IMG/VR virus record: IMGVR_UViG_3300042359_000853
Span: 124,001 to 188,000 of that record
Length of the DNA: 64,000 nucleotides
Strand: one strand, 5' to 3'
Part shown: piece after piece, positions 10,101-49,103 of the stretch
How positions within the stretch are numbered: the stretch's first letter is position 1
Layout of the letters: every line of letters starts with the position of its first letter
Made by a program: the position numbers and the translations under genes
Notes under the pieces: model-generated
What the model was told of the DNA's origin: nothing
Seen by the model: the letters and a program-made list of their open reading frames with translations, nothing else
The model's database searches: none

Positions 10101-11112
10101 AAACACACTTGCGTATTGGGACACAGCACTCAGAAGTTCTGGATATGATGCGTCATCATCGGTAGAAGTTTGGGTTCAGTTTGCTGTCGTAGGTGACAGC
10201 TCATCCCAAACATTCTACATAAACGGATCTCAAGTTGGTAGTACAATTTCTTTCGGTGCTGGTGGAACTACACACTGGGGTTGGGGTAATAATGATATAG
10301 TTCCGCAATCTTTTGGTCATGTTGCCAATCTATATTTTTACAATAGAAAGTTATCACTAGCAGAAATCACACAACAATATGATTTCCTCTCTCCTAGATT
10401 TGTACAAGTAACACCAACACCAACTTCTACAACAACACCGACACCTACACCAACTCCTACTGTAACACCAAATAGTGATATGTTACTTAAATTAGACGCT
10501 AATCTTTCAGAGAGTTATCCAGGCTCAGGCACTACTTGGTATGATCTAGCAGGCACACAACAAAACATGACTCTTGTTGGTAATCCTACTTTTGTTTCTG
10601 GAACTATATCTTATTTCGATTTCAACGGATCAGGTCAATATGCGCAAGGATCGGGTCTTACTGTTCCAACAACGGTTTATACTAAGTCCGTCTGGTTCTG
10701 GGTAGATGTATATACTGATAACAACATAGTAAGTGGATTTGATGGTGTTGGTGGTCACTTCATGTATATGGGTAGCTCACCAAAAATACAAGTTGGTCAC
10801 CACAATCAAGGGGTTGTATTCAATACCTATCAATCTACTGGAACAATATCACTTAATACATGGTACAATGTAGTTGTAACTTTCAATACTTCGAATGGAT
10901 TTAAAATTTATATAAATGGTCAGTTCGACAGTTCTCACAATATGACATTAGCACATCTTGGTAGTGGAACTACAAATTTAGCTAGTTACGCTAATACGGG
11001 GGGTAATTATCTAAATGGAAGAATATCAAAAGTCTATACTTGGCAAAAAGTTTTATCTGATCAAGAAGTTCTTGATATGTATAATCTTGATAAATCTTAC
11101 TTTGGTCACTAA
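7183..11112 (+). CDS. Multi-LamG/ConA-like lectin-domain fiber/adhesin with Thr/Pro-rich linkers
   Basis: N-terminal LamG (WTHFAIVY..IYKNG) plus three modules starting D(P/A)xxSxSYxGSGTT with Y(L/I)(D/N)G cores, separated by (TP)n/(T)n tracts. Confidence 0.8.
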   Translation: MNFTIEWFQYMTSDLGNPRVFSINSFPTAKIAVSIESSIFRLWINSGIRFQEPVSLILNNWTHFAIVYTNGSIKIYKNGQKIGNTIEYYSGMITDYDDKLYIGTDLEEDSYFSGRLSNFRWTQDEVYSSNFNPLAQNYDVLADTILLLKFDDINDFVYDSSDTGKDTYGFTLSWSSTSPIGGSGSVVFNGIDGYLYVEPVDDFDFSAASITPTQTPTQTLTPTPSLSIVATSSTTTTTTTTTSTSTTSTTTLEPRVNYTSRVKFLYNKITKIARRGKDYYFEWELLVDESLKQKELGLLSDVMLKYFGINWDRYPTLEDFKKKSWPHIRSVTEGVQNVELKKISDAKGVYQIGWDFYLVSNNYSIGQIKELFEDGKEILRVSTLLQIEDLTSATSSIYEKYTTGIDLLKSDYLLISPTPTPTQTPTPTVTVTPTKTPTRTPTPTRTMTPTVTQTPTVTATPTVTPTVTSTLTPTVTPSVTETPTQTSTVTPTQTVTPTETSTQTPTQTPTITPSVTSTITPTVTSTPTETPTQTSSETPTSTVTPTLTVTPTRTVTPTNTQTPTTTPTSTITEGSIASGAFFYFDPGNTSSYSGSGTTLNDISGNGNNGSIFGSPVHTSGAGGYFTFDGVNDYILSPDIYFGATETHTIEVWIRPTAVDDCIWSDLGQPTINDGYHFAGAQILQTGPFNQIITSLWNGTAVTRVVNGAGSYLNTWKQVVRVYNGSVLTSYLDGVIGGTISIAYDSPHNDGITDWYLAFGAIDTTTYLGSVAGYFAGGYGIIRYYRRALSASEVLQNYNSTVYSYNTTTTTTTTIAPSSTPTPTQTPTQTPTSSQTPTTTPTSSITNTPTQTPTNTPSVTTTSAPVTLGLVIELDAYDSSSYPGSGTTVSNLRSPGTYDHTLTGSSFTTLNGIKCFDCSSGTKRVVVNGTGPLLPTTGYTYITWGRLKNDTSGFRTLLYTNSPKYTPITIPDGSNTLAYWDTALRSSGYDASSSVEVWVQFAVVGDSSSQTFYINGSQVGSTISFGAGGTTHWGWGNNDIVPQSFGHVANLYFYNRKLSLAEITQQYDFLSPRFVQVTPTPTSTTTPTPTPTPTVTPNSDMLLKLDANLSESYPGSGTTWYDLAGTQQNMTLVGNPTFVSGTISYFDFNGSGQYAQGSGLTVPTTVYTKSVWFWVDVYTDNNIVSGFDGVGGHFMYMGSSPKIQVGHHNQGVVFNTYQSTGTISLNTWYNVVVTFNTSNGFKIYINGQFDSSHNMTLAHLGSGTTNLASYANTGGNYLNGRISKVYTWQKVLSDQEVLDMYNLDKSYFGH
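8428..8895 (+). repeat. Low-complexity Thr-Pro coding repeat (mucin-like linker); smaller tracts near 7810-7935, 9595-9770, 10410-10470
   Basis: Degenerate ACNCCN codon runs encoding TPTQTPTxTPT. Confidence 0.9.
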
Positions 11113-11879
11113 CCGAATAAATCATCACTTTTACCGTAGAAATGTTCCCTCAAAATTGGTAGATAATCATGACATTTGTATATCTTAGCTTCGTCGCCCT
11201 CTGGTCCTAAATGAACGAGATATCCCGATGGTATGATAATACCTTTACCCTCTAGGATAAGACGGTAGAGTGAAATCTGAATCGAATATTCATTGAGGTG
11301 AGTTTTACACCAATCTTGGAAAGGAGGTAGGAGTTTTTCCCAACATTTTTCAGATTCATCTACACCAGTGAACTTTTTATTGGATTTCCAATCAATAATA
11401 AATGGTATATCACCTTTTAGAAAAATAGAATCAATCGTTCCAGCAAGACCAAGCTCACCAGAGAAAACTTTAAGTTCAAACACGACTGGCTCAAAGTTTT
11501 TTAGATACTTAGCCCAGAAAAGATTGAATTTGTTGATTCTACGAACAGCTTCAATATCTGTAGGTAGTTCTTGATAAATGCCGTTGTAGTAGTTCTCGAC
11601 CCACTTATGAACTGAAGTTCCAAGATCGGTGGATATTTTGGCACCAGTTTTCCATTCTAATAAAATCTCTTCTACTGGAACTCCAGTTTTTTCGCTCCGT
11701 TTTTTTGCCCAAAAATCTTCGTCGAATTTTTTATGAAATCTCGAGATATATTTAGTAACTGAAGTAAGTTCAGTATCTCTATAATAATATCGGTGAGCTG
11801 CCTCGTTAAAGACAAACTCTTTATCCTTGAAAACTTCTAATCTATCCTTGAGATTCTGGGTTGCTATCTTGTTCGTCAT
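11109..11879 (-). CDS. PD-(D/E)XK exonuclease (Cas4/YqaJ-like)
   Basis: TSVT..GTSVH..E..LAGTIDSI..IIDWKSN..YSIQISLY. Confidence 0.85.
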   Translation of the reverse strand: MTNKIATQNLKDRLEVFKDKEFVFNEAAHRYYYRDTELTSVTKYISRFHKKFDEDFWAKKRSEKTGVPVEEILLEWKTGAKISTDLGTSVHKWVENYYNGIYQELPTDIEAVRRINKFNLFWAKYLKNFEPVVFELKVFSGELGLAGTIDSIFLKGDIPFIIDWKSNKKFTGVDESEKCWEKLLPPFQDWCKTHLNEYSIQISLYRLILEGKGIIIPSGYLVHLGPEGDEAKIYKCHDYLPILREHFYGKSDDLFG

Positions 11880-13395
11880 CTGGATTATAGTCTAGAAGAG
11901 ATGATGGTGTCTCAATAAAAGTTTCCTCTCTGTTTCTAATCATATTTATAGAAACTCTGAGTTGAGAAGCTAATTCTTGTCTGAGTAATTCAGAATTTCT
12001 GAGTAATTCAGAACGGTCCCGGTCTACGACTATATCGGATCGGAGTCTTCGTGTATCCAAGTGCCCTGTAATATCGCCCATAGATTCCTCATATACAACC
12101 TGTTCAGATGGGTCTTCTGATACATTTATATCTACCGCTGCATTATTTTCATTACCTAGTTCGGGTTCGGGTCGTTGAATCTCGATCGTTTGTTGATGTA
12201 GAAATCTTCTGTAAGGATTTCTTTCAGTTAATAACTCTCTGAATTTCTCTACTTTTTTCATTTTCAGATCTGCTACATCTGAATTTTCAATATCACCGTT
12301 GAGCTCTTCCCATTTTCCTGAGAAAAGATGATCTTCAATTTTATCAGAATATCTACAATCATCAACATGAATCCATCGATTAAGAATATCAGATGAAACA
12401 ACACGGTTTCTATGAACTCTGATATCACGATAATCTAGATAGATTACATCTGAACTATTGTAGTAGTTCAAGTCCTCTTGACTTTGCTCAAGTGAACTAC
12501 TGGGATTAAAAGATCCACTAGAAGAGGTCATTACTACGATTCTCTCACTATTTTTTGGATGATAGTTGTAGAAAGTTTTACTATCCAGGTCAAAAAACTT
12601 GAACGTATCTAAATAGGGAAATCTACTAATATCGGTAGTATCAAGTTTTACCGAAAGTTCAAGGTATTGACGCTTTCCATCTACCATAAACCATAAAGAA
12701 GAGTTCCAACTCTGTTCAGCGCGGCAGTAGTATCCGTTTTCTGTAGCAAAGTCTTTAAAGAGTCCACGATACACAGAATCGTTGGTTGTGTAGATTCTAT
12801 CCATGATTTTCAGACCACCATCGACTTCCCAAAGAAGAGCTCTTCCTAAGAGTGTTCCGAAAATTTTATCACGAAGAATAAGTAGATCGATAGTTCCACT
12901 ATTTTTCGTGTAGAGATCAAAGAACTCCTGACAAGATTTATGCTTCATACAAGACGAGTTCAAGCTACCGTGTGTTCGCTTATCGTAACTTTCTTCATCA
13001 TACCACCATGTGATTTCCTCACCAGTGGCGATGGAAAACTGGGTATGTAGTTTAGATCCGTGAGATTTGATACTATCGATGAATATTTCCATTTCTTGAT
13101 AGTCAATTTTTCTAAAAATCTTAGAAATAACACCAGATGGTTTTGTTTGATAACGCTTTGATGAAGACCAAATCTCATCTTGAGAAATCTTCTCAAACCT
13201 ATCGTGTGTAAGGTAGGAAAGTTTTGAAGGATCAGAAATCGAAATGCCTAAGTAGTTGACAGGATCTTCTACGATTTCATCAAGAGGTATTCTACCCTCA
13301 AGAAGAATCCTCGCGTAGTAAGATTTAGAAGATATAGCTTCAAGAAGATTGTGAAGCTCGGGTGAGATTTCTGGTTTGAAATAAGTTGGTTCCAT
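11842..13395 (-). CDS. Conserved phage protein, SCM-RALLW-MDRIY family, copy 1
   Basis: SLNSSCMKH..GRALLW..IMDRIY..FPYLDTFKF; paralog of 46286..47707. Confidence 0.7.
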   Translation of the reverse strand: MEPTYFKPEISPELHNLLEAISSKSYYARILLEGRIPLDEIVEDPVNYLGISISDPSKLSYLTHDRFEKISQDEIWSSSKRYQTKPSGVISKIFRKIDYQEMEIFIDSIKSHGSKLHTQFSIATGEEITWWYDEESYDKRTHGSLNSSCMKHKSCQEFFDLYTKNSGTIDLLILRDKIFGTLLGRALLWEVDGGLKIMDRIYTTNDSVYRGLFKDFATENGYYCRAEQSWNSSLWFMVDGKRQYLELSVKLDTTDISRFPYLDTFKFFDLDSKTFYNYHPKNSERIVVMTSSSGSFNPSSSLEQSQEDLNYYNSSDVIYLDYRDIRVHRNRVVSSDILNRWIHVDDCRYSDKIEDHLFSGKWEELNGDIENSDVADLKMKKVEKFRELLTERNPYRRFLHQQTIEIQRPEPELGNENNAAVDINVSEDPSEQVVYEESMGDITGHLDTRRLRSDIVVDRDRSELLRNSELLRQELASQLRVSINMIRNREETFIETPSSLLDYNPDDEQDSNPESQG

Positions 13396-13403
13396 TTTTT
13401 TTA

Positions 13404-14276
13404 TTAAGTGGTTTGAAGAAGAAAGTCGAGTTTTTCGTTACGAATAAAACAAGTTGTCATACGCATAATTTTTTGTGCTTCTTTTTTTATAACGTGAGAA
13501 TCTTCGTTAGAAAATATCTGTAAATATAGTGTAAAAACATCAAACGCGTCTAGGCTAAAATCATTTTCTCTAGTGAAAATAATATCTTTACTCTGTGTAT
13601 ATAAAACTTGTTTTTGCGAAGGTGTTAAATCCTTTAGTATCCTACGACCAAAAATTAAAACTTTCTTAAAGGCATCAAACTTTTTGTGATCTGATTTATT
13701 ATCCTTTTCACAAAGAATACGCCTGATATTTGAAATCATAACTCTTTGACCAACCAAACTGTTGATAGCTGAGATTTGTTCTAAAAAAGTTTCACTTACT
13801 AGATTTGATGAAACTTTATCAGCCGCTCTTGTTACACCAGTCAAATGTTTCTTATAGAGGGAAAAGTTTCTATCTGAAAAAACGATTTGTTTATTGCTGT
13901 CTTGTGATTGTAGTCCGATATTCAGCTGGAGAGCTCTTGATTTATCAGAAGAAGACAGAATGTAAAAACTTTTGTTCCAAAAAGATCCAGCTACTTCAAC
14001 TTGATCTGAAAGTAGGGTTAAGGACTGAACACCACCACGAATTTGTAGTCGATAAAAACTAATAGTAAAATTTTGTTCGATTTCAAGAATCTTTTCTTTC
14101 ATGAAAGAAGTAATATCAAATATCTCGTATTTATCCGATACTTCCCTTGTTGAAATTACCCTGTCACCCCACTTGGTGACTACCGTATTTGAGACTTTAT
14201 GAATGGTGATTTTTTCGATTTGAGAAAAAAGTTTCTCTCTATCCCAGGCCTTAAAATTTGACATTATCCAATTCAT
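13404..14276 (-). CDS. DUF932-like protein
   Basis: ILSSSDKSRALQLNIGL and YKKHLTG resemble the DUF932 core. Confidence 0.4.
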   Translation of the reverse strand: MNWIMSNFKAWDREKLFSQIEKITIHKVSNTVVTKWGDRVISTREVSDKYEIFDITSFMKEKILEIEQNFTISFYRLQIRGGVQSLTLLSDQVEVAGSFWNKSFYILSSSDKSRALQLNIGLQSQDSNKQIVFSDRNFSLYKKHLTGVTRAADKVSSNLVSETFLEQISAINSLVGQRVMISNIRRILCEKDNKSDHKKFDAFKKVLIFGRRILKDLTPSQKQVLYTQSKDIIFTRENDFSLDAFDVFTLYLQIFSNEDSHVIKKEAQKIMRMTTCFIRNEKLDFLLQTT

Positions 14277-14298
14277 AAGTTTATTTTTATCTACTCAG

Positions 14299-14306
14299 CA
14301 AATATA
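14299..14306 (-). promoter_or_regulatory. Bacteroidota primary-sigma -7 element (TATATTTG)
   Basis: Matches TAnnTTTG, upstream of 13404..14276. Confidence 0.6.
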
Positions 14307-14336
14307 GAGAGGAATGAATGGAGTTGTATATTAAAT

Positions 14337-15203
14337 TTAGGTTAAGTTTGTGTAGTTCATCACCAAAACTTCGGTTGCTCGTGATTGTTTTTGTCCACTT
14401 TTAGCCATCGCTGCTTTTGCGAACTCTTGCTGAGTCCATCGGTAACTATCCTTAGGAAACCACTCTTCGAGCTCATTAAAGGGATAATAAGATAGTGAAA
14501 ATTTTCCCGAGATTGATTTTAGACAATTTGCTAGACGAAGATGGTCTCGAGAAGTAAAATCGTGATTGGAATAGTAGGATCCCTCACCGACTTTCCAATA
14601 GGGTGGATCGCAATAGAAATAAGTATCAGGTGAATCTAAGAGAGTAATGATCTGTTCAAAATCAAGCCGATAAACATCGGTTATTAGAGAAAACTTTTCG
14701 CACCATTTATCATTCTCTAGTTTATTGATAAAAGATTGAAACTTCGAGTGGTATTTACCCTTCAGATCAATATATCCTGAAGTCTTGGGATTTGCTCCTG
14801 AGAAGATATTAGAAAGAATCAGCGCGTGTTTGGCAGCTCTTTCGAGATTTGGGACTTCTTCTATTTTGGATTCATCACCATAGAGCTCTCGTTGAGATTG
14901 TAAAAAAAAGTTTTTAGTATCTAAAGATGAACCTACACCCTTTTTTTGATAGGGAAAACTTTTACATATTTCTAAAACACCTTTAGGATCTTGACGAAGA
15001 CTTAGAAAAAGATTGTAGTTCAAGGGGTTCAAATCGTTATAGACAATCCTTTCAAGGTGTGGGTAGTTATCCAAGTTCATTCCGAAATAAGTCCAGAACA
15101 TACCCGAGAAAGTTTCTACATAAGTTTTGATATTTTTTGGTATTTCGGGTATAATCAACTTTTTAGCTATTTGACTTTTACCACCGATATAGGGAAGGCA
15201 CAT
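14337..15203 (-). CDS. dam: DNA adenine methyltransferase (Dam/D12 class), copy 1
   Basis: PYIGGKS, ETFSG, YNDLN, CDPPY. Confidence 0.9.
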   Translation of the reverse strand: MCLPYIGGKSQIAKKLIIPEIPKNIKTYVETFSGMFWTYFGMNLDNYPHLERIVYNDLNPLNYNLFLSLRQDPKGVLEICKSFPYQKKGVGSSLDTKNFFLQSQRELYGDESKIEEVPNLERAAKHALILSNIFSGANPKTSGYIDLKGKYHSKFQSFINKLENDKWCEKFSLITDVYRLDFEQIITLLDSPDTYFYCDPPYWKVGEGSYYSNHDFTSRDHLRLANCLKSISGKFSLSYYPFNELEEWFPKDSYRWTQQEFAKAAMAKSGQKQSRATEVLVMNYTNLT

Positions 15204-15793
15204 TAATCTAGTTCTCCTTTCATTGCTTTTATTTTATCTCGGATCTGAGATGCGATCTCGTAGTCTTCTTCTTCGAGTGCTTTATCGAGCATTTTCTGAA
15301 GATTTTCTAAAGTTACTTTAGGAGAAGAGCCTTGTTTTTTTGGCTGTTGAGGTTCGGATGCCTCTTCATCTAGATCAGGGATCAACCCGTAGATTTCCAT
15401 TACTTCAGATGAAACATAAATAGGAAGTTCTAGTTTTGCTGCTAGACAAAGAGCATCTCCTACACCTACATTGATCTCAATTTCTCCTTCTTGTGAGTTT
15501 GTAATAACTTTAGTATAAAAAATTCCCTCGAAAACAGAGTGTAAATAAACCGCATCCATCGTAAAGTTGTGATTAGTTGAGAGCGATTCAAAAAGATCCC
15601 AAACAAAAACTTTTTGAGTTTCTATTTTTTCAAGTTGAAGTGCGATAAACTGAGCTTCTCTATCACGAACAATCACCGGTAGTTTTCTATCACCACTCTC
15701 TTCTTCAAGAACAACGATATAGTTATCACCCATCGATTGGGTCTGTGATAGACCGATTATATTACACTCTATTTTCTTTTGGAAATTTGACAT
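15203..15793 (-). CDS. Bifunctional nuclease (DUF151) with C-terminal UVR domain
   Basis: VLEEESGDRKLPVIV..EAQFIA..GDALCLA..PIYV; LDKALEEEDYEIASQIRDKI. Confidence 0.85.
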   Translation of the reverse strand: MSNFQKKIECNIIGLSQTQSMGDNYIVVLEEESGDRKLPVIVRDREAQFIALQLEKIETQKVFVWDLFESLSTNHNFTMDAVYLHSVFEGIFYTKVITNSQEGEIEINVGVGDALCLAAKLELPIYVSSEVMEIYGLIPDLDEEASEPQQPKKQGSSPKVTLENLQKMLDKALEEEDYEIASQIRDKIKAMKGELD

Positions 15794-15837: not shown

Positions 15838-15869
15838 AAAAAAAACCTGGACAGAATCCAGGTTTTTTT
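15838..15869. terminator. Intrinsic terminator hairpin (bidirectional geometry)
   Basis: AAAAAAAACCTGGA-CAGAA-TCCAGGTTTTTTT. Confidence 0.85.
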
Positions 15870-15870
15870 C

Positions 15871-17058
15871 TTACATTTTTACCTTACTCTCGGTAGTAGT
15901 TGGTGGTTTGTTGATCCGTTGAATGTTCAGTAGGACATCTTTGAAGGCGCTAAGGAATTTTTTCACCTTTGGGTTTGAGATTTGATCCGTTGGGTCGTCT
16001 AAAATCCATAGTAGATAAGCTGTGAGTTCATCATCACCAAGACGCTTTAGAAACTTTGTGAGGTTTGTTAGTTGCTTATCGGATAGATTACCAACAGCAA
16101 ATTCTGGTTCTTTTAAGGATTGAACAAGTTCAGAGTTCTTATCACGGTTGTATTTATCTAGTATTTCTGAAACCTCATCATACCTATTGAGAACGTCACG
16201 AATACTCACACTCATCATTTCTTCACAATATTGTAGAAAACGTTGAGCTCCATTTCCAACATACGAGTGGGAAACTTCTCGTAGATAATCAATGAACATA
16301 TTCACTGAAGATTCTTTACCGAAGTTCTGAACAATAAAATCACTCAAGAAAGTCCAAGAACGAGGTGTAGCGTATGCTTTTGTATTTTCGGTTGGATTCT
16401 GATACAGCTTATCAGGGTAAGCTTTAAGATAAGAGATAATCAAGGGGTGAACCCACTTTGACGCAAAGTCTGTTTGCCAATCGTTCGCAGAGAGTGAGTG
16501 AGACATATGAATAAGACGGTTGTTCAACGCATTGTCGAACTCTTCTACGTCTGTTCCATCTTCGTCACCAAGGTTACCAGAGGCCATCATTAAAACGTTA
16601 CTATTAAACTTGAAGTCACCAATCTCACGCTCAAGTAAGATCTGAAGAGCTGCGTTTCTTACAAATTGCGGAGCTCTGTTCAACTCTTCGAAGTGAATAA
16701 TGGTGGGTTGAGAGTTAGCTTTCAGAGCCCACTCTGGTGTAGAATATCCGTGACACTTCCTAGAGACACCATCGATATCTACTTCTTTAAGGTAGGGAAA
16801 CTTAAAGTCGGTTTCATCAGACATCGATAGACGTAAATCCATATACTGGAAATTCATCTTGTCTGCGATAGACCTGGCGATAGCTGATTTAGCGATACCA
16901 GGTTTTGAGGTAATATAAAGAACACCACTCTTAGGCCACATACACATAAAATATAAACGCTCTCTACGGGTGAGTTCCCGCATTCTTTGGGAGATCTCTT
17001 CGGGAAGAGCTGTGGTCACTGGAAGTGGATTTGGATTTTTTGGAGACATTTTAGCCAT
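15871..17058 (-). CDS. MoxR-like AAA+ ATPase
   Basis: SKPGIAKS (variant Walker A), IIHFEELNRA (Walker B), ASGN, DNALNNR, ATPRSW. Confidence 0.9.
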   Translation of the reverse strand: MAKMSPKNPNPLPVTTALPEEISQRMRELTRRERLYFMCMWPKSGVLYITSKPGIAKSAIARSIADKMNFQYMDLRLSMSDETDFKFPYLKEVDIDGVSRKCHGYSTPEWALKANSQPTIIHFEELNRAPQFVRNAALQILLEREIGDFKFNSNVLMMASGNLGDEDGTDVEEFDNALNNRLIHMSHSLSANDWQTDFASKWVHPLIISYLKAYPDKLYQNPTENTKAYATPRSWTFLSDFIVQNFGKESSVNMFIDYLREVSHSYVGNGAQRFLQYCEEMMSVSIRDVLNRYDEVSEILDKYNRDKNSELVQSLKEPEFAVGNLSDKQLTNLTKFLKRLGDDELTAYLLWILDDPTDQISNPKVKKFLSAFKDVLLNIQRINKPPTTTESKVKM

Positions 17059-17493: not shown

Positions 17494-18084
17494 CTAAATA
17501 TCCAAAGAATCTGAAAAGTTTTTTTCGACTTGTATGTTTTTTAGGGAGACAACAGGCTTGACACGCTCAAAAACCTTTTCAACCTGACCTAGATTGGATA
17601 GATTATCAATAGTTCCGGGTTTTATGGAATATTTGATAGTTTCTGTAAGTATTTTGGATTTGTCTTCTGGTGATATTTCATCTGACATTCCGATCATCTC
17701 TTGTAGTATAGGTAGATACTTCTCTACCATTTCAGAGGATATAGACCATTCGTGTGTTTCTTGAATAGCATCTCTACCAAGTTCAGATTCGACCAAAGAT
17801 TTAGTGGTCTCATTTAGAGAGATATACCTATCACTCGGAACGAAAAGAACACTTGAAACTTCACTTTCTCTTTGTGAATAAACTTTCAGAGAACCTGGAT
17901 TCATACGAGAATTTTCATACATCCGGCACCACTCGACTTTAGCTACTTCTTTGACTTGGTCGGTCAGAGTAGATACGATGTTCTCTCTTTCTTTGATCTC
18001 AAGATTGAGTTTATGTATTTGTGAAACCCTCGAAAAAAATAGTGGATCTTTAGTTTCTACGGATATTTGTAACTTTTTAGGCAT
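17494..18084 (-). CDS. Hypothetical protein
   Basis: ORF in operon, overlapping start/stop. Confidence 0.6.
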   Translation of the reverse strand: MPKKLQISVETKDPLFFSRVSQIHKLNLEIKERENIVSTLTDQVKEVAKVEWCRMYENSRMNPGSLKVYSQRESEVSSVLFVPSDRYISLNETTKSLVESELGRDAIQETHEWSISSEMVEKYLPILQEMIGMSDEISPEDKSKILTETIKYSIKPGTIDNLSNLGQVEKVFERVKPVVSLKNIQVEKNFSDSLDI

Positions 18085-18490
18085 ATTGTAACTCTTTGTA
18101 TTTTAATGATTTTACACTCTTTAGATTAGAGCAAAGATACGCTCTAAAAAAACGATTACCAAAATTAGTTCCTTGAATCTCAACTAGATAACTTTGGTCT
18201 GAAACTTTTTTAACTGAAATTTTAGTCTCGTTTGTATGCCAGTAAGGATACCTTACTACACCGGTGCTTCTTGTGTTTCGAAGTGTATTCTCAAATTGTA
18301 ACCGATCGACCTCTCCTTTTCCAAATAAGTTCTCAAAATATTCATCTAGATGCCTAGCTTCTGATTCATCAAAGTTCCAGAGTTTTTTGTCAGTCAATAG
18401 ATGTTCAATCTCTGATGATGTTATTGGCAGAGTATCTGATGAAAAGGTAGTAGAGAGAGTTGTGTAGTAATCTGATTGTGTTGAAAACAT
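18077..18490 (-). CDS. Hypothetical protein
   Basis: ORF in operon. Confidence 0.55.
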   Translation of the reverse strand: MFSTQSDYYTTLSTTFSSDTLPITSSEIEHLLTDKKLWNFDESEARHLDEYFENLFGKGEVDRLQFENTLRNTRSTGVVRYPYWHTNETKISVKKVSDQSYLVEIQGTNFGNRFFRAYLCSNLKSVKSLKYKELQYA

Positions 18491-18507
18491 AAATATTTTT
18501 TACAAGG

Positions 18508-19554
18508 TTAGGCGATATTCATTGTAGCTCCAGCTTGACCGATGAAACTCTTTTCTGCTATTTCAAGAGCTTCAGATATTACTCTTACAATACGATAGGG
18601 ATCAGCGTTCGAAGCTGGTCTTCTATCTTCAACATACCCACGCCAGTCTTTGGCTGTTTGTAGTGGAACACGAAGTGATGCGCCTCTATCAGAGACACCC
18701 CAACTAAACGTATCAATAGACTGGGTTTCGTGTTTACCGGTAAGACGAAGTTCATTAGAAGAGCCGTAGTTTGAGATATGCTCTTTGTGTCGTGTCTCAA
18801 AGGTGTTAAATAGTATATCAAAATAATCCTTACCACCAACTTCACGCATCATGGTATTAGAGAAGTTGCAGTGAAGACCACTGCCATTCCAATCACCAAC
18901 AACTGGTTTCGGGTGAAACTCAATTGAAAATCCCCACTTTTCTGAAAGTCTTTGTAGAAAATGACGAGCTACCCAAAGATCATCACTAGCGCGTCTGGAC
19001 GAAGTATTGAAAATCTGAAACTCCCACTGACCTAGGAGAACTTCAGCGTTGGTTCCTGTGATTTTAAGACCGGCATCCAAACAATGCTCTAAATGTTCAG
19101 ATACAAATTTTCTCCCGTGAACTTGATCACTACCAACACCGCAGTAATACTTACCTTGTGGTTGAGGATATCCATTCTGTGGAAAACCAAGAGGTCTTCC
19201 ATCGAGCATAATAGTATATTCTTGTTCGAAACCATACCAAGTATCATCCTTCTCGGGAGTTAAGTGTCGAGTATTACTCTCATGTGGTGTTCCATCTGGA
19301 TTATAAACTTCACAAAGAACTAAATAAGAGGTATAGTATCCGTAATCTACCGTGTTCGGGTAGAGTGATACTGGTTTTAAGATCCTATCAGAGTAATGAC
19401 CCTCTGCTTGTTGAGTAGATGAACCGTCGAAAGACCATTCTGGACAATCTTCAATAGAGAAGTTTTCTTCATCAATCTCTAAAATTTTTACCTTACTTCG
19501 AAGGTTTGGCTCTGGTCGATATCCATCTAGCCATACATATTCAAGTTTTATCAT
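18508..19554 (-). CDS. glnII: Glutamine synthetase type II
   Basis: KLEYVWLDG, WSFDGSST, GFEQEY, YYCGVG, NAEV..GQWEFQ, HPKP..GDWNGSGLHCNFS, RLTGKHET, DRGAS, EDRRPASN. Confidence 0.96.
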   Translation of the reverse strand: MIKLEYVWLDGYRPEPNLRSKVKILEIDEENFSIEDCPEWSFDGSSTQQAEGHYSDRILKPVSLYPNTVDYGYYTSYLVLCEVYNPDGTPHESNTRHLTPEKDDTWYGFEQEYTIMLDGRPLGFPQNGYPQPQGKYYCGVGSDQVHGRKFVSEHLEHCLDAGLKITGTNAEVLLGQWEFQIFNTSSRRASDDLWVARHFLQRLSEKWGFSIEFHPKPVVGDWNGSGLHCNFSNTMMREVGGKDYFDILFNTFETRHKEHISNYGSSNELRLTGKHETQSIDTFSWGVSDRGASLRVPLQTAKDWRGYVEDRRPASNADPYRIVRVISEALEIAEKSFIGQAGATMNIA

Positions 19555-19562
19555 ATATTTAG

Positions 19563-19868
19563 TTATTTTTTTGTAACATAAAAATCCTCAGCGCCTTCGT
19601 ATCGTTCAACAAGATTATTATCCAAAAGAAACTTCACTAGATGTGTAGTTTGAGTATCTGAAATTTTAAGAGTTCTTGAAATAAGATCTTTGTGACAGGG
19701 CCTTCTAAGCTTAGCAAGTATTTTATCAATAGATTTTTGATCGGGAATTGTTGAAATCACCTTTTGGTAACTATCTCTAGCTAAGTTCATTTTTTGATTG
19801 ACTAGAAGATTAATATCTTCTGAAGATTTTCCTAAAATTTCCTCTTCGGTAAGTGTTATTGATATCAT
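19563..19868 (-). CDS. Small protein, possible winged-helix C-terminus
   Basis: ISRTLKISDTQTTHLVKFLLDNNLVE. Confidence 0.45.
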   Translation of the reverse strand: MISITLTEEEILGKSSEDINLLVNQKMNLARDSYQKVISTIPDQKSIDKILAKLRRPCHKDLISRTLKISDTQTTHLVKFLLDNNLVERYEGAEDFYVTKK

Positions 19869-19879
19869 AATTTTTTTAT

Positions 19880-20215
19880 TTAAACTTCGTCGTCGTAGTC
19901 TGATTCACTCCACTCGTCACCGGAATCCCAGCTATCAAGTTCATCATCATTATCTTCGTTGTATTCGTCGTAAGATGCTAGATCTTCCGAAGCGTATTCG
20001 TATTCGGCTACATCGTTTTTAGAAAAAAGTGTAAGTAAAGATTTCAACTCAACTTCAGTCAGGGAAATATCTTTAATTCTAAAGGCGTCGTAAGAGCTAT
20101 TTTCGAGCATTTCATACTCAATTTTTTCACTATCTTGAAGTTTGTTGAGAGCATCGTAAATATCATCGTAGTTCACACAATCGTAAAGTGTATAGTATTT
20201 TGCTAGTTTAGCCAT
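19880..20215 (-). CDS. Small, highly acidic protein
   Basis: D/E-rich tail DEYNEDNDDELDSWDSGDEWSESDYDDEV. Confidence 0.6.
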   Translation of the reverse strand: MAKLAKYYTLYDCVNYDDIYDALNKLQDSEKIEYEMLENSSYDAFRIKDISLTEVELKSLLTLFSKNDVAEYEYASEDLASYDEYNEDNDDELDSWDSGDEWSESDYDDEV

Positions 20216-20945
20216 TTGTATTTATATTTTTTAGTTTTTTTTCTATTAATGTTTGCGCTAGGTAGGGAAGTTTTTTATTATCGACCCACTGAGCAACAAC
20301 TCTGAACTTATCATCAATAAGTGAAATCGTGAAGTAGTTGAAGTTATCATCTCTAAATGTAGCGGTTGTAGATTCTATTTTTATAGGATAAATATAATCG
20401 AACCTATCAAGATGGTAGTTCTCCACTGACTTGATAAACTCGAAATTTCCCTCTTTATAATAATTTTGTGATAAAAGTTTCAAGAATTTATCTACTTTTT
20501 CGAGCTTTGTAGACTTAAGCTGACTACTAACATCACGAGGATAGAAACCAAGATTAGCAAAAAGAGGTCGTTGATCCAAACCAAGGTAAGTTCGTATAGA
20601 TCCAAGTGTTTTCGAGTTACAAATAGCATAATAAGAAGTGTTTTCTCTGTGTTGTGAAAGGCCTAGACCTTCGATAAAAATATCTGTGACCTCAAAATCA
20701 GTAACTCTCTTTAACTTTTCAACATCTCTAGGTGAAAAGGATCGAACCTCGATATCATCAGCTACGATTATTAGATAACCCGGTCCTTCACTTTTTATAC
20801 GATTATCGACATATTTTTTATAATCTTCTTGGGAGAGTGATTCTTTCATTTGTTCAATAACCTGGGAAAGAGAACCTTCTTCTATACGAACAGCTAGAAT
20901 ATTGGTTCCGAAGGTATCGCGTATCCATTCAATTTTTCTAATCAT
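20208..20945 (-). CDS. 2H-phosphoesterase-like protein lacking catalytic histidines
   Basis: Scaffold YVDNR..G.Y-LIIV..GLG..N.SYYAIC.S..L..IR..LGL..FANLGF; the HxT motifs are replaced. Confidence 0.5.
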   Translation of the reverse strand: MIRKIEWIRDTFGTNILAVRIEEGSLSQVIEQMKESLSQEDYKKYVDNRIKSEGPGYLIIVADDIEVRSFSPRDVEKLKRVTDFEVTDIFIEGLGLSQHRENTSYYAICNSKTLGSIRTYLGLDQRPLFANLGFYPRDVSSQLKSTKLEKVDKFLKLLSQNYYKEGNFEFIKSVENYHLDRFDYIYPIKIESTTATFRDDNFNYFTISLIDDKFRVVAQWVDNKKLPYLAQTLIEKKLKNINTNG

Positions 20946-20950
20946 TTAAC

Positions 20951-22231
20951 TTAGTCATTTTCTTTGCCTTCGATAATGATTTGCTTGAGCTTACCATTAC
21001 TTCGAGCTATTGGGCATTCCCTATTTACAGAAATAATCAAAACTTTACCTTTTACTCTTGAAAGATCTAAATGATCGGTTTCACCATCAGTAAGAATAAC
21101 CGAGTTACAATCGTTGTGATTTTTTACAATATGATCGATCATCGGTTGTAGGCAAGTTCCACCAAGACCTTTGATAGGAATACTCTGAAGTTTTTTAGCA
21201 TTTTTGATATTCTGAACCCATTTAACTTCGGTATCAGATTCCATAAAGTTCATTTCGATATCGTTACGATTAACATATGAAAGAACCCGCTCAAAAGTTC
21301 CCTGACCACCCATTGAACCACTGGTATCTAAACCGACATTGATTCGGTTTTTCATTTTACGAACACCTTTGACACCTTGAATACTTCTGCGGTTAGGTCT
21401 TACGATAGTTTTGTTCTTGATAGTTCCAAAGATCAAATTTGAAATAGCTCTTTTGATATAGGATAGGTAATCTTTTCTTTTCTTACGAAGTTTATTGAGT
21501 GTTTTTTCTACGTTAAAACTACTAAGACCACGACTATGTAACCTATCAATAGCGTCTTTTACCATTGACTCTCTTTGCTCTTCTGAGATTTCATCAGTGA
21601 TGTGAACATCAAGATACTGACCAGAGTTTTTTTCTAGATTATCTAAGATACTATCTAATGAGTGTGTGTCAATGGTTCCACCAGGTGATTTAGGATCTTT
21701 ACCAAAAGGTCCATAACTACCACTATTCTGATCTTTACCACCATTTTTTTGACGCTCTTCTTGTTTATCACGAAGCCACTCGTAGAGCTCTTCAAAAATA
21801 AGATTACCTTCGTATTCTTTCGGAACAAAAAGTGCCATATTCTTACCCTCTTCGTCTTTGGGGATCTCAATGAAATCTGGCAGAATATCCTCTACGATAA
21901 TATGGTTGATGATCATGTCCTGTGCGATATTGGATAGTTTAGGATCGTATTGGCCAGTAATCGTTCTACGAGGATGGTTTAGAAGCAGGTGAAAATCTTC
22001 GTGAAGTGTAATAAAGTTGATCTCTCTTTGAGTGAGACGATTTAGAAAAGAACTAGAATAAAAGAAGTTCATACCCTTTGCTGTCATATTCACCGCACAG
22101 GTTCCGATATTTTCATCTTCTTTAAAGTTAATAAAAAGATTGAAGTTACCGTAAAAGGGTAAATTGACACGGCTATCAATCAGCATACTTTGAACCGATT
22201 CGAGAAGTTTCTCGTGTATGTTTTTAATCAT
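20951..22231 (-). CDS. DUF2201-like metallopeptidase + VWA-like protein (MoxR partner)
   Basis: LHEDFH (HExxH), NIAQDMIIN, RPNRR, LDTSGSM (MIDAS), GLGGT, LTDG. Confidence 0.88.
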   Translation of the reverse strand: MIKNIHEKLLESVQSMLIDSRVNLPFYGNFNLFINFKEDENIGTCAVNMTAKGMNFFYSSSFLNRLTQREINFITLHEDFHLLLNHPRRTITGQYDPKLSNIAQDMIINHIIVEDILPDFIEIPKDEEGKNMALFVPKEYEGNLIFEELYEWLRDKQEERQKNGGKDQNSGSYGPFGKDPKSPGGTIDTHSLDSILDNLEKNSGQYLDVHITDEISEEQRESMVKDAIDRLHSRGLSSFNVEKTLNKLRKKRKDYLSYIKRAISNLIFGTIKNKTIVRPNRRSIQGVKGVRKMKNRINVGLDTSGSMGGQGTFERVLSYVNRNDIEMNFMESDTEVKWVQNIKNAKKLQSIPIKGLGGTCLQPMIDHIVKNHNDCNSVILTDGETDHLDLSRVKGKVLIISVNRECPIARSNGKLKQIIIEGKEND

Positions 22232-48753: not shown

Positions 48754-49103
48754 TGGTGGAGGTGCTGGGATTCGAACCCAGGTTTCTACATTTACCTAAA
48801 TAATCAATCATTCACAAGCTTAGAACTCTTTTCTAAGAGAACCAACTATCGGATTTTATCGAAGAACCTTCCGAAAAAACTTTTGAGGCTATTTATAGAG
48901 TTACCTCATTCTCGGAAACGTCTAGGCTACGGCCAATCTGTTTGCCTTTAGGATGTTGTTGCGTAGGGCGAATACTAAGTCTTCAACGCTTCCTACTTCA
49001 TTCGTGTTGCCACTTAAAGTTTTCATACAACTTATGAATCGGTGAGTATGATCCGATGCTTGCTTGATTACCCGAATAAATGAGTCAAAAGCCATTCACC
49101 CCC
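48754..49103 (-). ncRNA. ssrA: tmRNA
   Basis: 5' GGGGGTGAATGGCTTTTGAC, 3' GGGTTCGAATCCCAGCACCTCCACCA; 7-bp acceptor stem with G3.U wobble and encoded CCA; internal tag ORF 48922-49011 ending LAVA*. Confidence 0.93.

What the first reader, a model, noticed from the sequence alone, without database searches (positions are those of the whole stretch)
20208..20945. 2H phosphoesterase with both catalytic His motifs lost: possible cyclic-nucleotide sponge
The scaffold resembles 2H phosphoesterases, but the two Hx(T/S) motifs read LIIV and FANLGF. Active phage 2H enzymes such as Acb1 degrade CBASS signals. A dead version in an early operon could bind such signals or RNA ends without cleaving them.
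Basis: inference. Interest (0 to 1): 0.6.

Follow-up and report, generated by a model that had tools for sequence, protein, structure and literature searches.

The report
Catalytically dead 2H phosphoesterase, huge phage
A huge phage keeps, under purifying selection, a copy of an RNA-end-healing 2H phosphoesterase that has lost its whole active site, so it is a genuine pseudoenzyme, more likely a scaffold working with a conserved acidic partner protein than a cyclic-nucleotide sponge.

Summary
Window 20208-20945 (-) encodes a 245-aa protein. Residues 12-150 fold as a 2H phosphoesterase (Pfam 2H-SAK, 27.5 bits against a cut-off of 27; AF2 pLDDT 94; the top 19 VIA-align 2 fold matches are all 2H proteins).

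In about 140 of the 150 best homologues the two motifs read YHxT and HxT[LI]GF. Here they read YLIIV and LFANLGF. All eight near-invariant active-site positions (Y16, R52, D53, H58, T60, D127, H129, T131) are replaced, mostly by hydrophobic residues.

The loss is shared by one well-supported clade (SH-aLRT 98) nested among active enzymes. Other lineages lost the motifs separately.

The gene is not decaying: the reading frame is intact and dN/dS is 0.13-0.19. However, the dead domain has become the fastest-evolving segment of its gene block, while the C-terminal domain is nearly frozen.

Two further results:
- In 39 of 39 loci a small acidic-tail protein gene follows immediately, and here it overlaps by 8 nt.
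- Active relatives usually sit beside a CCA-adding enzyme. Dead ones never do.

The pair lies between a DUF2201 peptidase-vWA gene and a MoxR ATPase gene.

The sponge idea is not supported, because the phosphate-binding residues are gone and the old cleft is not conserved. A non-catalytic scaffold or adaptor role is more likely, but it is untested.

The parts
20208..20945 (-). Gene for the 245-aa two-domain protein: a dead 2H-SAK domain plus a conserved C-terminal domain
   Evidence: ORF; Pfam PF22547; AF2 pLDDT 94.1; orthologues at 97, 83, 67, 45 and 37% identity with the same length
20511..20945 (-). N-terminal 2H-fold domain (codons 1-145), catalytically dead and a local divergence island
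   Evidence: VIA-align 2 hits to 2H proteins over residues 12-150. Nucleotide identity to L007 is 67-78% here against 95-98% in the flanks. dS 1.28 and dN 0.18, against dS 0.02-0.55 and dN <=0.06 in the ten other segments of the block.
20763..20777 (-). Former HxT motif 1, now YLIIV (H58L, T60I)
20544..20564 (-). Former HxT motif 2, now LFANLGF (H129F, T131N); the preceding conserved Asp127 is Pro
20211..20510 (-). C-terminal domain (codons 146-245), two helices, a four-stranded beta-meander and a final helix. It has no Pfam family and is the best conserved part of the protein in the dead clade.
   Evidence: Secondary structure; only weak fold matches, Z<=4.6; dN 0.008 against L007; 86-99% identity among close orthologues
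19880..20215 (-). Partner gene: a 111-aa protein with a roughly 70-residue beta-alpha-beta-beta-alpha core (YY[ST]LxEC motif) and a disordered D/E/Y-rich tail. Its ATG overlaps the stop of the 2H gene by 8 nt.
   Evidence: A homologue lies immediately downstream of the 2H gene in 39 of 39 loci with enough DNA; overlap; AF2 model
20951..22231 (-). DUF2201 metallopeptidase-vWA protein, immediately upstream
   Evidence: PF13203 and PF09967; homologues lie upstream of the 2H gene in most related loci
15871..17058 (-). MoxR-like AAA+ ATPase, last gene of the unit
   Evidence: phrog_1297 at 2.9e-52 and weak AAA/AAA_5 hits; homologues lie downstream of the pair in most related loci
15838..15870 (.). 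Strong bidirectional terminator-like hairpin directly after the MoxR gene. It probably marks the 3' end of the transcription unit that holds the dead 2H gene.
   Evidence: 15-pair stem with T runs on both strands
17494..18084 (-). orf196, a conserved companion of the island, present in both active and dead loci
   Evidence: jackhmmer hits in 18 loci
18077..19868 (-). Block found only in the dead clade: orf101, a GlnII-type glutamine synthetase and orf137, inserted between the partner gene and orf196
   Evidence: Homologues occur only in L001/L015, L005, L006 and L007; NF041605 GlnII at 400 bits

Best explanation
The gene encodes a pseudoenzyme. It descends from the phage two-domain 2H-SAK family, which consists of RNA 2',3'-cyclic-phosphate end-healing enzymes that usually sit beside a CCA-adding enzyme.

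In the window's clade the whole active-site constellation was replaced. The fold, the C-terminal domain and the obligate downstream acidic-tail partner were all kept.

The protein therefore no longer hydrolyses phosphoester ligands through the old cleft, and probably no longer binds them there. What selection keeps is a non-catalytic role carried mainly by the C-terminal domain and the partner, with the dead 2H domain retained as a folded scaffold. The most likely role is as an adaptor or scaffold pair inside the DUF2201(peptidase-vWA)...MoxR transcription unit in which the pair is embedded.

Shown: descent, loss of the active site, retention under purifying selection, the shift of constraint from the N- to the C-domain, and the gene linkage. 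Inferred: physical binding to the partner, any link to MoxR-vWA, and the scaffold role itself.
For: **Family and fold.** PF22547; AF2 pLDDT 94; an all-2H top of the fold list; a viral 247-aa 2H-SAK cluster at TM 0.65.

**Active site gone.** In active members the eight positions are 93-100% conserved (Y16 0.96, R52 0.99, D53 0.97, H58 1.00, T60 0.97, D127 0.93, H129 1.00, T131 0.99). All eight are replaced in the window protein and its closest orthologues; only the deepest branch, P0004, still has His129. The structural positions G93, G95, G133, F134, D138 and K144 are largely kept. No His is invariant in the clade.

**One clade.** The window protein and P0001-P0005 form a clade with SH-aLRT 98, nested among active members. 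Starred branches force at least 2 separate losses in the family, and parsimony gives 5.

**Not decay.**
- The 245-248-aa frames are intact in six lineages.
- dN/dS is 0.13-0.19 overall, about 0.13-0.14 in the N-domain and 0.05-0.13 in the C-domain.

**Constraint moved to the C-domain.** C-minus-N identity is +0.23 +/- 0.09 in dead pairs (n=15) and -0.16 +/- 0.08 in active pairs (n=1225).

**Partner.** It is adjacent in 39 of 39 loci, whether the search was seeded from the 2H gene or from the partner, and here it overlaps the 2H gene by 8 nt. It is kept with dead copies (L005, L006, L007, L014, L019).

**Context.**
- DUF2201 lies upstream and MoxR downstream in most loci.
- In L014 the order appears to be DUF2201-2H-partner-MoxR with no other called gene between; the contig is only 2 kb, so both end genes are partial.
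- A terminator follows MoxR.
- A CCA-adding enzyme lies within 4 kb upstream in 15 distinct active loci and in none of the dead loci. No PF01743 or PF02834 hit was found in the 227-kb record.
Against: - No direct evidence of any interaction. The complex prediction gave no verdict, which counts neither for nor against.
- Shared gene order among related huge phages may be inherited synteny rather than functional coupling.
- The N-domain is still under purifying selection (dN/dS about 0.13), so it does something more than fill space.
- The record is only about 39% complete, so a CCA-adding enzyme or an active 2H paralogue could lie elsewhere in the genome.
- The C-terminal domain and the partner have no recognisable fold relatives, so the proposed role has no positive structural support.
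Confidence: 0.55

Rival explanations
1. Sponge: the dead 2H domain binds cyclic oligonucleotide immune signals or 2',3'-cyclic phosphate RNA ends without cleaving them, and so sequesters them.
For: - The fold is kept and under purifying selection.
- Active 2H enzymes of phages do act on such ligands (Acb1; paper PMC9117128, listed).
- Catalytic residues were lost repeatedly and independently in the family, as expected if a non-catalytic use of the fold is accessible.
Against: - Both Thr, R52, D53, Y16 and D127 are also gone, replaced by I, S/V, E, I, P and N. No phosphate-binding constellation remains.
- The domain is the least conserved part of the protein and a divergence hotspot.
- The family context is RNA repair, not Acb1. 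There is no PF23474 hit, and the Z 5.9 match to 7t27 is no better than to any other 2H protein.
- The sponge families named in the literature read here (Acb2, Acb4, Tad1, Tad2) are not described as 2H-fold proteins.
Confidence: 0.1
2. Arms-race decoy or inhibitor: the dead 2H domain is a protein-binding surface aimed at a variable host factor, such as a defence sensor or a tRNA-cleaving toxin that recognises the phage repair enzyme. Divergent alleles of the domain are exchanged among phages.
For: - The N-domain alone is a sharp divergence island against two relatives. dS is 1.28 against 0.02-0.55 elsewhere, and dN is 0.18 against <=0.06.
- dN/dS nevertheless stays at about 0.13, the pattern of old alleles moved by recombination.
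- The edges of the island coincide with the domain boundaries.
- No template repeat or reverse transcriptase explains it.
Against: - Only four closely related sequences are available, so one or two chance recombination events could give the same picture. dS also varies among the other genes of the block (0.016-0.55).
- No site-level evidence of positive selection.
- No candidate host target.
Confidence: 0.15
3. Still an enzyme: a new active site or a different chemistry has replaced the HxT dyad.
For: Purifying selection acts on the N-domain. R118, D138 and K144 are invariant in both active and dead members.
Against: - No invariant His, and no new polar cluster conserved within the clade. The replaced positions became L, I, F, I and P.
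- The retained R118, D138 and K144 are equally invariant in active members, so they are not a novelty of the dead clade.
Confidence: 0.05
4. Decaying relic: a gene on its way to loss after the RNA-repair function became dispensable.
For: Constraint on the N-domain relaxed relative to the C-domain after inactivation, and the neighbouring CCA-adding enzyme is missing.
Against: - Frames of conserved length are intact in six lineages that differ by up to 63% in sequence.
- dN/dS is 0.13-0.19 in both domains.
- The AF2 model is very confident.
- The partner and the overlap with it are kept.
Confidence: 0.03

Closest known systems
Pfam PF22547 '2H-SAK' (2H phosphoesterase domain of the 'Swiss Army Knife' RNA-repair proteins)
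   Same: - The sequence family matches at and just above the cut-off.
- 109 of 113 homologues match it.
- The fold is the same.
- The protein nests inside the viral two-domain subgroup.
   Different: - Both HxT motifs and four further near-invariant residues are lost.
- The fungal SAK proteins fuse the domain to an RNA ligase, a PTP phosphatase and a kinase. The phage proteins instead carry an unnamed 100-aa C-terminal domain and a separate acidic partner.
Active two-domain homologues in uncultured huge phages (LR745206.1, LR756502.1 and IMG/VR contigs L016-L038)
   Same: - Same length and same two domains.
- The same partner gene lies immediately downstream.
- The same island with DUF2201, orf196 and MoxR.
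   Different: - They keep YHxT and HxTLGF, and most lie next to a CCA-adding enzyme.
- In them the N-domain is the better conserved half.
Acb1 (phage anti-CBASS 2H nuclease; PDB 7t27; Pfam PF23474)
   Same: A small viral 2H-fold protein, matched at Z 5.9 with rmsd 3.7 over 106 residues.
   Different: - No sequence-family match.
- Acb1 is catalytically active and uses both HxT motifs.
- Acb1 has no C-terminal domain.
- No link of Acb1 to an acidic partner or a CCA-adding enzyme is known to me (own knowledge; not checked here).
LigT / ThpR 2',5'-RNA ligase-type cyclic phosphodiesterases (e.g. 1vgj, 4qak)
   Same: The best fold matches, at Z 7.4 and 6.6.
   Different: - They are active enzymes of about 180 aa with a single domain.
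- Pfam LigT_PEase is matched by only 4 of 113 family members, and only weakly.
Viral nucleotide sponges (Acb2, Acb4, Tad1, Tad2)
   Same: Only the proposed logic, binding without cleavage.
   Different: - No sequence-family hit to any sponge family came up, and the fold lists are led by 2H enzymes.
- As I recall them, the sponge folds are unrelated to 2H (own knowledge; the paper read states only that Acb4 resembles a dsRBM).
- The phosphate-binding residues are absent here.
MoxR AAA+ / vWA-metallopeptidase pair of jumbo phages (Iyer et al. 2021, PMC7824862)
   Same: The flanking genes at 20951-22231 and 15871-17058 fit the pair described there as a proposed virion-assembly chaperone system.
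   Different: In the passages read, that paper does not mention the 2H gene and acidic partner found between the two genes here.

Membership tests
2H phosphoesterase superfamily | The 2H fold: two lobes of beta-sheet with flanking helices forming a central cleft | tested here: met
   AF2 pLDDT 94.1. The 19 best VIA-align 2 matches are all 2H proteins, with Z 7.4-4.8 over residues 12-150. Atlas TM is 0.65 to a 2H-SAK cluster.
2H phosphoesterase superfamily | Two H-x-T/S motifs on the central strands (the catalytic dyad) | tested here: not met
   Motif 1 reads L-I-I and motif 2 reads F-A-N. The protein is a member by descent but not a functional phosphoesterase.
Pfam PF22547 2H-SAK | Score at or above the curated gathering threshold of 27 bits | tested here: met
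   27.5 bits and 29.1 bits in the genome search. This is marginal because the catalytic columns are lost; active relatives score 64-73 bits.
Pfam PF22547 2H-SAK | Phylogenetic placement inside the family | tested here: met
   The clade of the window protein and P0001-P0005 (SH-aLRT 98) sits inside a starred clade of 17 with active members; the nearest active ones are P0006 and P0007.
Phage two-domain 2H-SAK module (defined here) | A C-terminal domain of about 100 aa plus an acidic-tail partner gene immediately downstream | tested here: met
   C-domain aligned. Partner present at 19880-20215 with an 8-nt overlap.
Phage two-domain 2H-SAK module (defined here) | A CCA-adding enzyme (PF01743) within 4 kb upstream | tested here: not met
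   Absent from the flanks and from the 227-kb record. Five active lineages also lack it, so this is a common feature rather than a defining one.
Acb1 anti-CBASS nuclease (PF23474) | Sequence-family match | tested here: not met
   No PF23474 hit at E<=0.1, and none among the families that 113 homologues match.
Acb1 anti-CBASS nuclease (PF23474) | Cleavage of cyclic oligonucleotide signals | not testable with these tools
   This needs biochemistry. The catalytic residues are absent.
Nucleotide sponge (functional class) | A conserved ligand pocket with phosphate- and base-binding residues, and tight binding without cleavage | tested here: inconclusive
   The old pocket residues are replaced and the domain is poorly conserved, which argues against a sponge. 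Binding itself was not tested.

The most novel reading that the evidence does not exclude
The strictly linked pair (2H-SAK two-domain protein plus acidic-tail partner), embedded between a peptidase-vWA gene and a MoxR ATPase gene and usually next to a CCA-adding enzyme, defines an undescribed tRNA 3'-end repair or quality-control system of huge phages.

In the window's clade this system was rewired. The enzyme became a fast-diversifying, non-catalytic decoy or adaptor whose dead domain is swapped among phages as a cassette, in an arms race with a host factor.
Probability: 0.15. Interest if true: 0.65.

Novelty: new variant of a known kind. Interest (0 to 1): 0.4.

Why it matters
Huge phages carry large sets of translation and RNA-repair genes whose workings are mostly unknown. 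This case gives a clean natural experiment. The same two-gene module exists in active and dead versions, inactivation arose more than once, and constraint measurably shifted from the enzyme domain to the C-terminal domain.

That separates a catalytic function (RNA-end healing, linked to CCA addition) from a second, non-catalytic function that alone is enough to keep the gene. It also names the partner protein to test.

The result corrects a tempting annotation as well. A dead enzyme in a phage is not automatically a sponge. Here the ligand-binding residues went together with the catalytic ones.

Tried and rejected
- **Complex prediction** of the dead 2H protein with the 111-aa partner: no verdict (ipSAE 0.01 in two runs, controls not run). 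This is neither support nor evidence against binding.
- **Source paper**: the paper that named the SAK proteins (Burroughs and Aravind, NAR 2016) is not held and text searches for it found nothing. What I say about 'SAK' comes from the Pfam name and the atlas cluster architectures.
- **PDB by sequence**: profiles gave nothing significant. The best hits were a recombinase at E 0.045 and AKAP7 at E 0.38.
- **Foldseek against the PDB** was weak (Usb1, E 0.035). The exhaustive VIA-align 2 search was needed.
- **Diversity-generating retroelement** as the cause of the divergence island: rejected for the held record. There is no second copy of the N-domain DNA and no RVT_1 hit in the 227-kb record.
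- **Net charge** of the domains does not separate dead from active members.
- **C-terminal domain**: no Pfam, PHROG or NCBIfam family, no atlas feature hit, and only weak fold matches.
- **Partner protein**: no family and only generic ferredoxin-like, ACT or prodomain-like matches at Z<=5.8.
- **Over-diverse alignments**: two related-loci runs with alignments too diverse to search failed and were repeated with narrower alignments.
- **'Early operon'**: the sigma-70 scan is at chance level (59 sites against 49.7 +/- 6.7), so it says nothing.

Full report
**1. What is at the coordinates**

Window 20208-20945 (minus strand) is an ATG-started ORF of 245 aa. It sits in a tightly packed run of minus-strand genes. 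The window is part of a 227.6-kb IMG/VR virus record that CheckV rates at about 39% complete, so it is a fragment of a huge phage. The only GenBank phage records with relatives are three uncultured phages of 634-642 kb.

**2.

- Pfam places residues 30-139 in PF22547 '2H-SAK' at 27.5 bits, against a cut-off of 27.
- An alignment-based AlphaFold2 model is very confident, with mean pLDDT 94.1.
- In an exhaustive structural comparison with 48,161 PDB chains, the 19 best matches are all 2H phosphoesterases aligned to residues 12-150. These include LigT 1vgj (Z 7.4), CNPase (6.9), MHV ns2 (6.7), AKAP18, Usb1, Acb1 7t27 (5.9) and a Burkholderia phage PDE (5.8).
- Each Z value is middling and Foldseek alone was weak. 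The uniformity of the list, the Pfam hit and the phylogeny agree with each other.

An exhaustive profile search found 385 relatives at E<=1e-3. About 140 of the 150 best have YHxT and [FL]HxT[LI]GF at the two motif positions. The window protein has YLIIV and LFANLGF there.

**3. The loss goes beyond the two histidines**

In active members eight positions are 93-100% conserved: Y16, R52, D53, H58, T60, D127, H129 and T131. In the window protein and its closest orthologues all eight are replaced (I, S, E, L, I, P, F and N in the window protein). Fold-supporting positions such as G93, G95, G133, F134, D138 and K144 are largely kept. No histidine is invariant in the clade. I infer that catalysis and phosphate binding in the old cleft are both gone.

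**4. The loss is clade-wide and the gene is not decaying**

The window protein and P0001-P0005 (97 to 37% identity) form one clade with SH-aLRT 98, nested among active enzymes. The deepest member, P0004, still has the second His but not its Thr, which suggests stepwise loss.

Other family members lost the motifs separately (P0086/P0099, P0028, P0075, P0018, and L019 for motif 1 only). Parsimony needs 5 changes of state, and at least 2 are forced by well-supported branches.

All clade members keep frames of 245-248 aa. Nei-Gojobori dN/dS is 0.13-0.19 overall, and well below 1 in each domain in nearly every comparison.

**5. Constraint has moved**

- In 1225 pairs of active two-domain proteins the 2H domain is the better conserved half (C-minus-N identity -0.16 +/- 0.08).
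- In the 15 pairs of the dead clade it is the worse conserved half (+0.23 +/- 0.09).
- Against the closest relatives the N-domain is a sharply bounded divergence island. Nucleotide identity to L007 is 67-78% where the flanks are 95-98%, and 57-63% to L005.
- Both dS (1.28) and dN (0.18) in the N-domain far exceed those of the ten other genes or domains of the block, where dS is 0.02-0.55 and dN is at most 0.06.
- Because dS is raised as well, this looks like exchange of an old divergent allele of just this domain, not only faster protein evolution.
- A diversity-generating retroelement is not the cause in the DNA held.

**6. A conserved partner**

The next gene (19880-20215, 111 aa) overlaps the stop codon of the 2H gene by 8 nt. 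Its homologue lies immediately downstream of the 2H gene in every locus with enough DNA, 39 of 39. These include loci found by searching with the partner itself, loci with dead 2H copies, and one locus where the 2H protein lacks the C-terminal domain.

The partner has a small beta-alpha-beta-beta-alpha core, with Y8, C13, L23 and L26 invariant, and a disordered D/E/Y-rich tail that usually ends in DDY. Its fold matches are generic. A complex prediction gave no verdict.

**7. Wider context**

Active relatives have a CCA-adding-type nucleotidyltransferase within 4 kb upstream in 15 distinct loci. None of the dead loci has one, and none was found in the 227-kb record.

Together with the architecture of the eukaryotic SAK proteins (RNA ligase + PTP + kinase + 2H), this points to RNA or tRNA 3'-end healing as the ancestral job. 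That is an inference.

Most loci, active or dead, also carry a DUF2201 metallopeptidase-vWA gene upstream, and an orf196 homologue and a MoxR-like ATPase downstream. In L014 the order appears to be DUF2201-2H-partner-MoxR with no other called gene between, although that contig is only 2 kb and its end genes are partial. In the window a strong terminator follows MoxR. This peptidase-vWA/MoxR pair has been described in jumbo phages and proposed to act in virion assembly (PMC7824862).

The dead clade alone has orf101, a GlnII-type glutamine synthetase and orf137 inserted after the partner.

**8. Interpretation**

The best reading is a pseudoenzyme kept for a non-catalytic role that resides mainly in the C-terminal domain and the partner, probably as an adaptor or scaffold within the vWA-MoxR unit.

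The sponge idea is weakened by three things: the loss of all likely ligand-contact residues, the poor conservation of the domain, and the RNA-repair ancestry of the family rather than Acb1 ancestry. It is not excluded without binding assays.

A decoy or inhibitor under diversifying pressure is the most interesting alternative, and it is suggested by the divergence island. Both a residual or new enzymatic activity and a decaying relic are unlikely.

**9. Novelty**

Members of the 2H superfamily without catalytic residues are known in principle (own knowledge). A trypanosome mitoribosomal protein appears among the fold matches, but its motifs were not checked. I therefore file this as a new variant of a known kind.

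What appears undescribed:
- the phage two-domain subfamily;
- its obligate acidic partner;
- its embedding between vWA and MoxR;
- the repeated inactivation with a shift of constraint.

No cultured phage carries the module, so nothing has been tested at the bench.

Noticed in passing
window 48754-49103 (-): A phage-encoded tmRNA gene (Rfam RF00023 at 65.3 bits; ARAGORN tag peptide ending ...ANRLAVA).
   Followed up: partly
window 18508-19554 (-): A GlnII-type glutamine synthetase (NF041605 at 400 bits, below the equivalog cut-off of 500) carried by the phage. Together with orf101 and orf137 it occurs only in loci of the dead-2H clade.
   Followed up: partly
window 20500-20985 compared with L007 and L005: A sharply bounded divergence island confined to the dead 2H domain. 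Both dS and dN are several-fold above every neighbouring gene, which suggests domain-level allele exchange. Within the same block, the WIN-L007 dS ranges from 0.016 (BFN nuclease) to 0.55 (MoxR), so the region is mosaic in general.
   Followed up: partly
L027/L028 1464-2042 and 3126-3707; L035/L036 1884-2477 and 3391-3996: In these active loci the CCA-adding enzyme gene upstream of the 2H gene is split into two ORFs about 1 kb apart, as if interrupted by an inserted element such as an intron or a homing endonuclease.
   Followed up: no
L019 4001-4750: A homologue in a 281-kb contig lost only motif 1 (FNMNII) and keeps motif 2 (LHITIGF). It has a GATase-domain gene upstream in place of the CCA-adding enzyme, and it keeps the partner.
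   Followed up: no
window 20951-22231 (-): PHROGs labels the family of this DUF2201 metallopeptidase-vWA protein 'HNH endonuclease' (phrog_1314 at 3.2e-48). Pfam finds DUF2201_N and DUF2201 instead, so the PHROG name looks like a misannotation.
   Followed up: no
window 11109-15793 (-): Downstream of the terminator lie a bifunctional-nuclease-domain protein with a UVR motif (15203-15793), a D12-class adenine methyltransferase (14337-15203) and a PD-(D/E)XK nuclease-like protein (11109-11879).
   Followed up: no
L001/L015 (IMGVR_UViG_3300049629_001818, 110 kb): A second IMG/VR contig carries a 100% identical copy of the gene and the same neighbours. It is probably the same phage, or a near-identical one, from the same data set.
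   Followed up: no
L003 6632-6982: In the 642-kb phage a small protein with a CHU_C type IX secretion signal domain lies between the CCA-adding enzyme and the 2H gene. This hints at a Bacteroidota host for this phage lineage.
   Followed up: no
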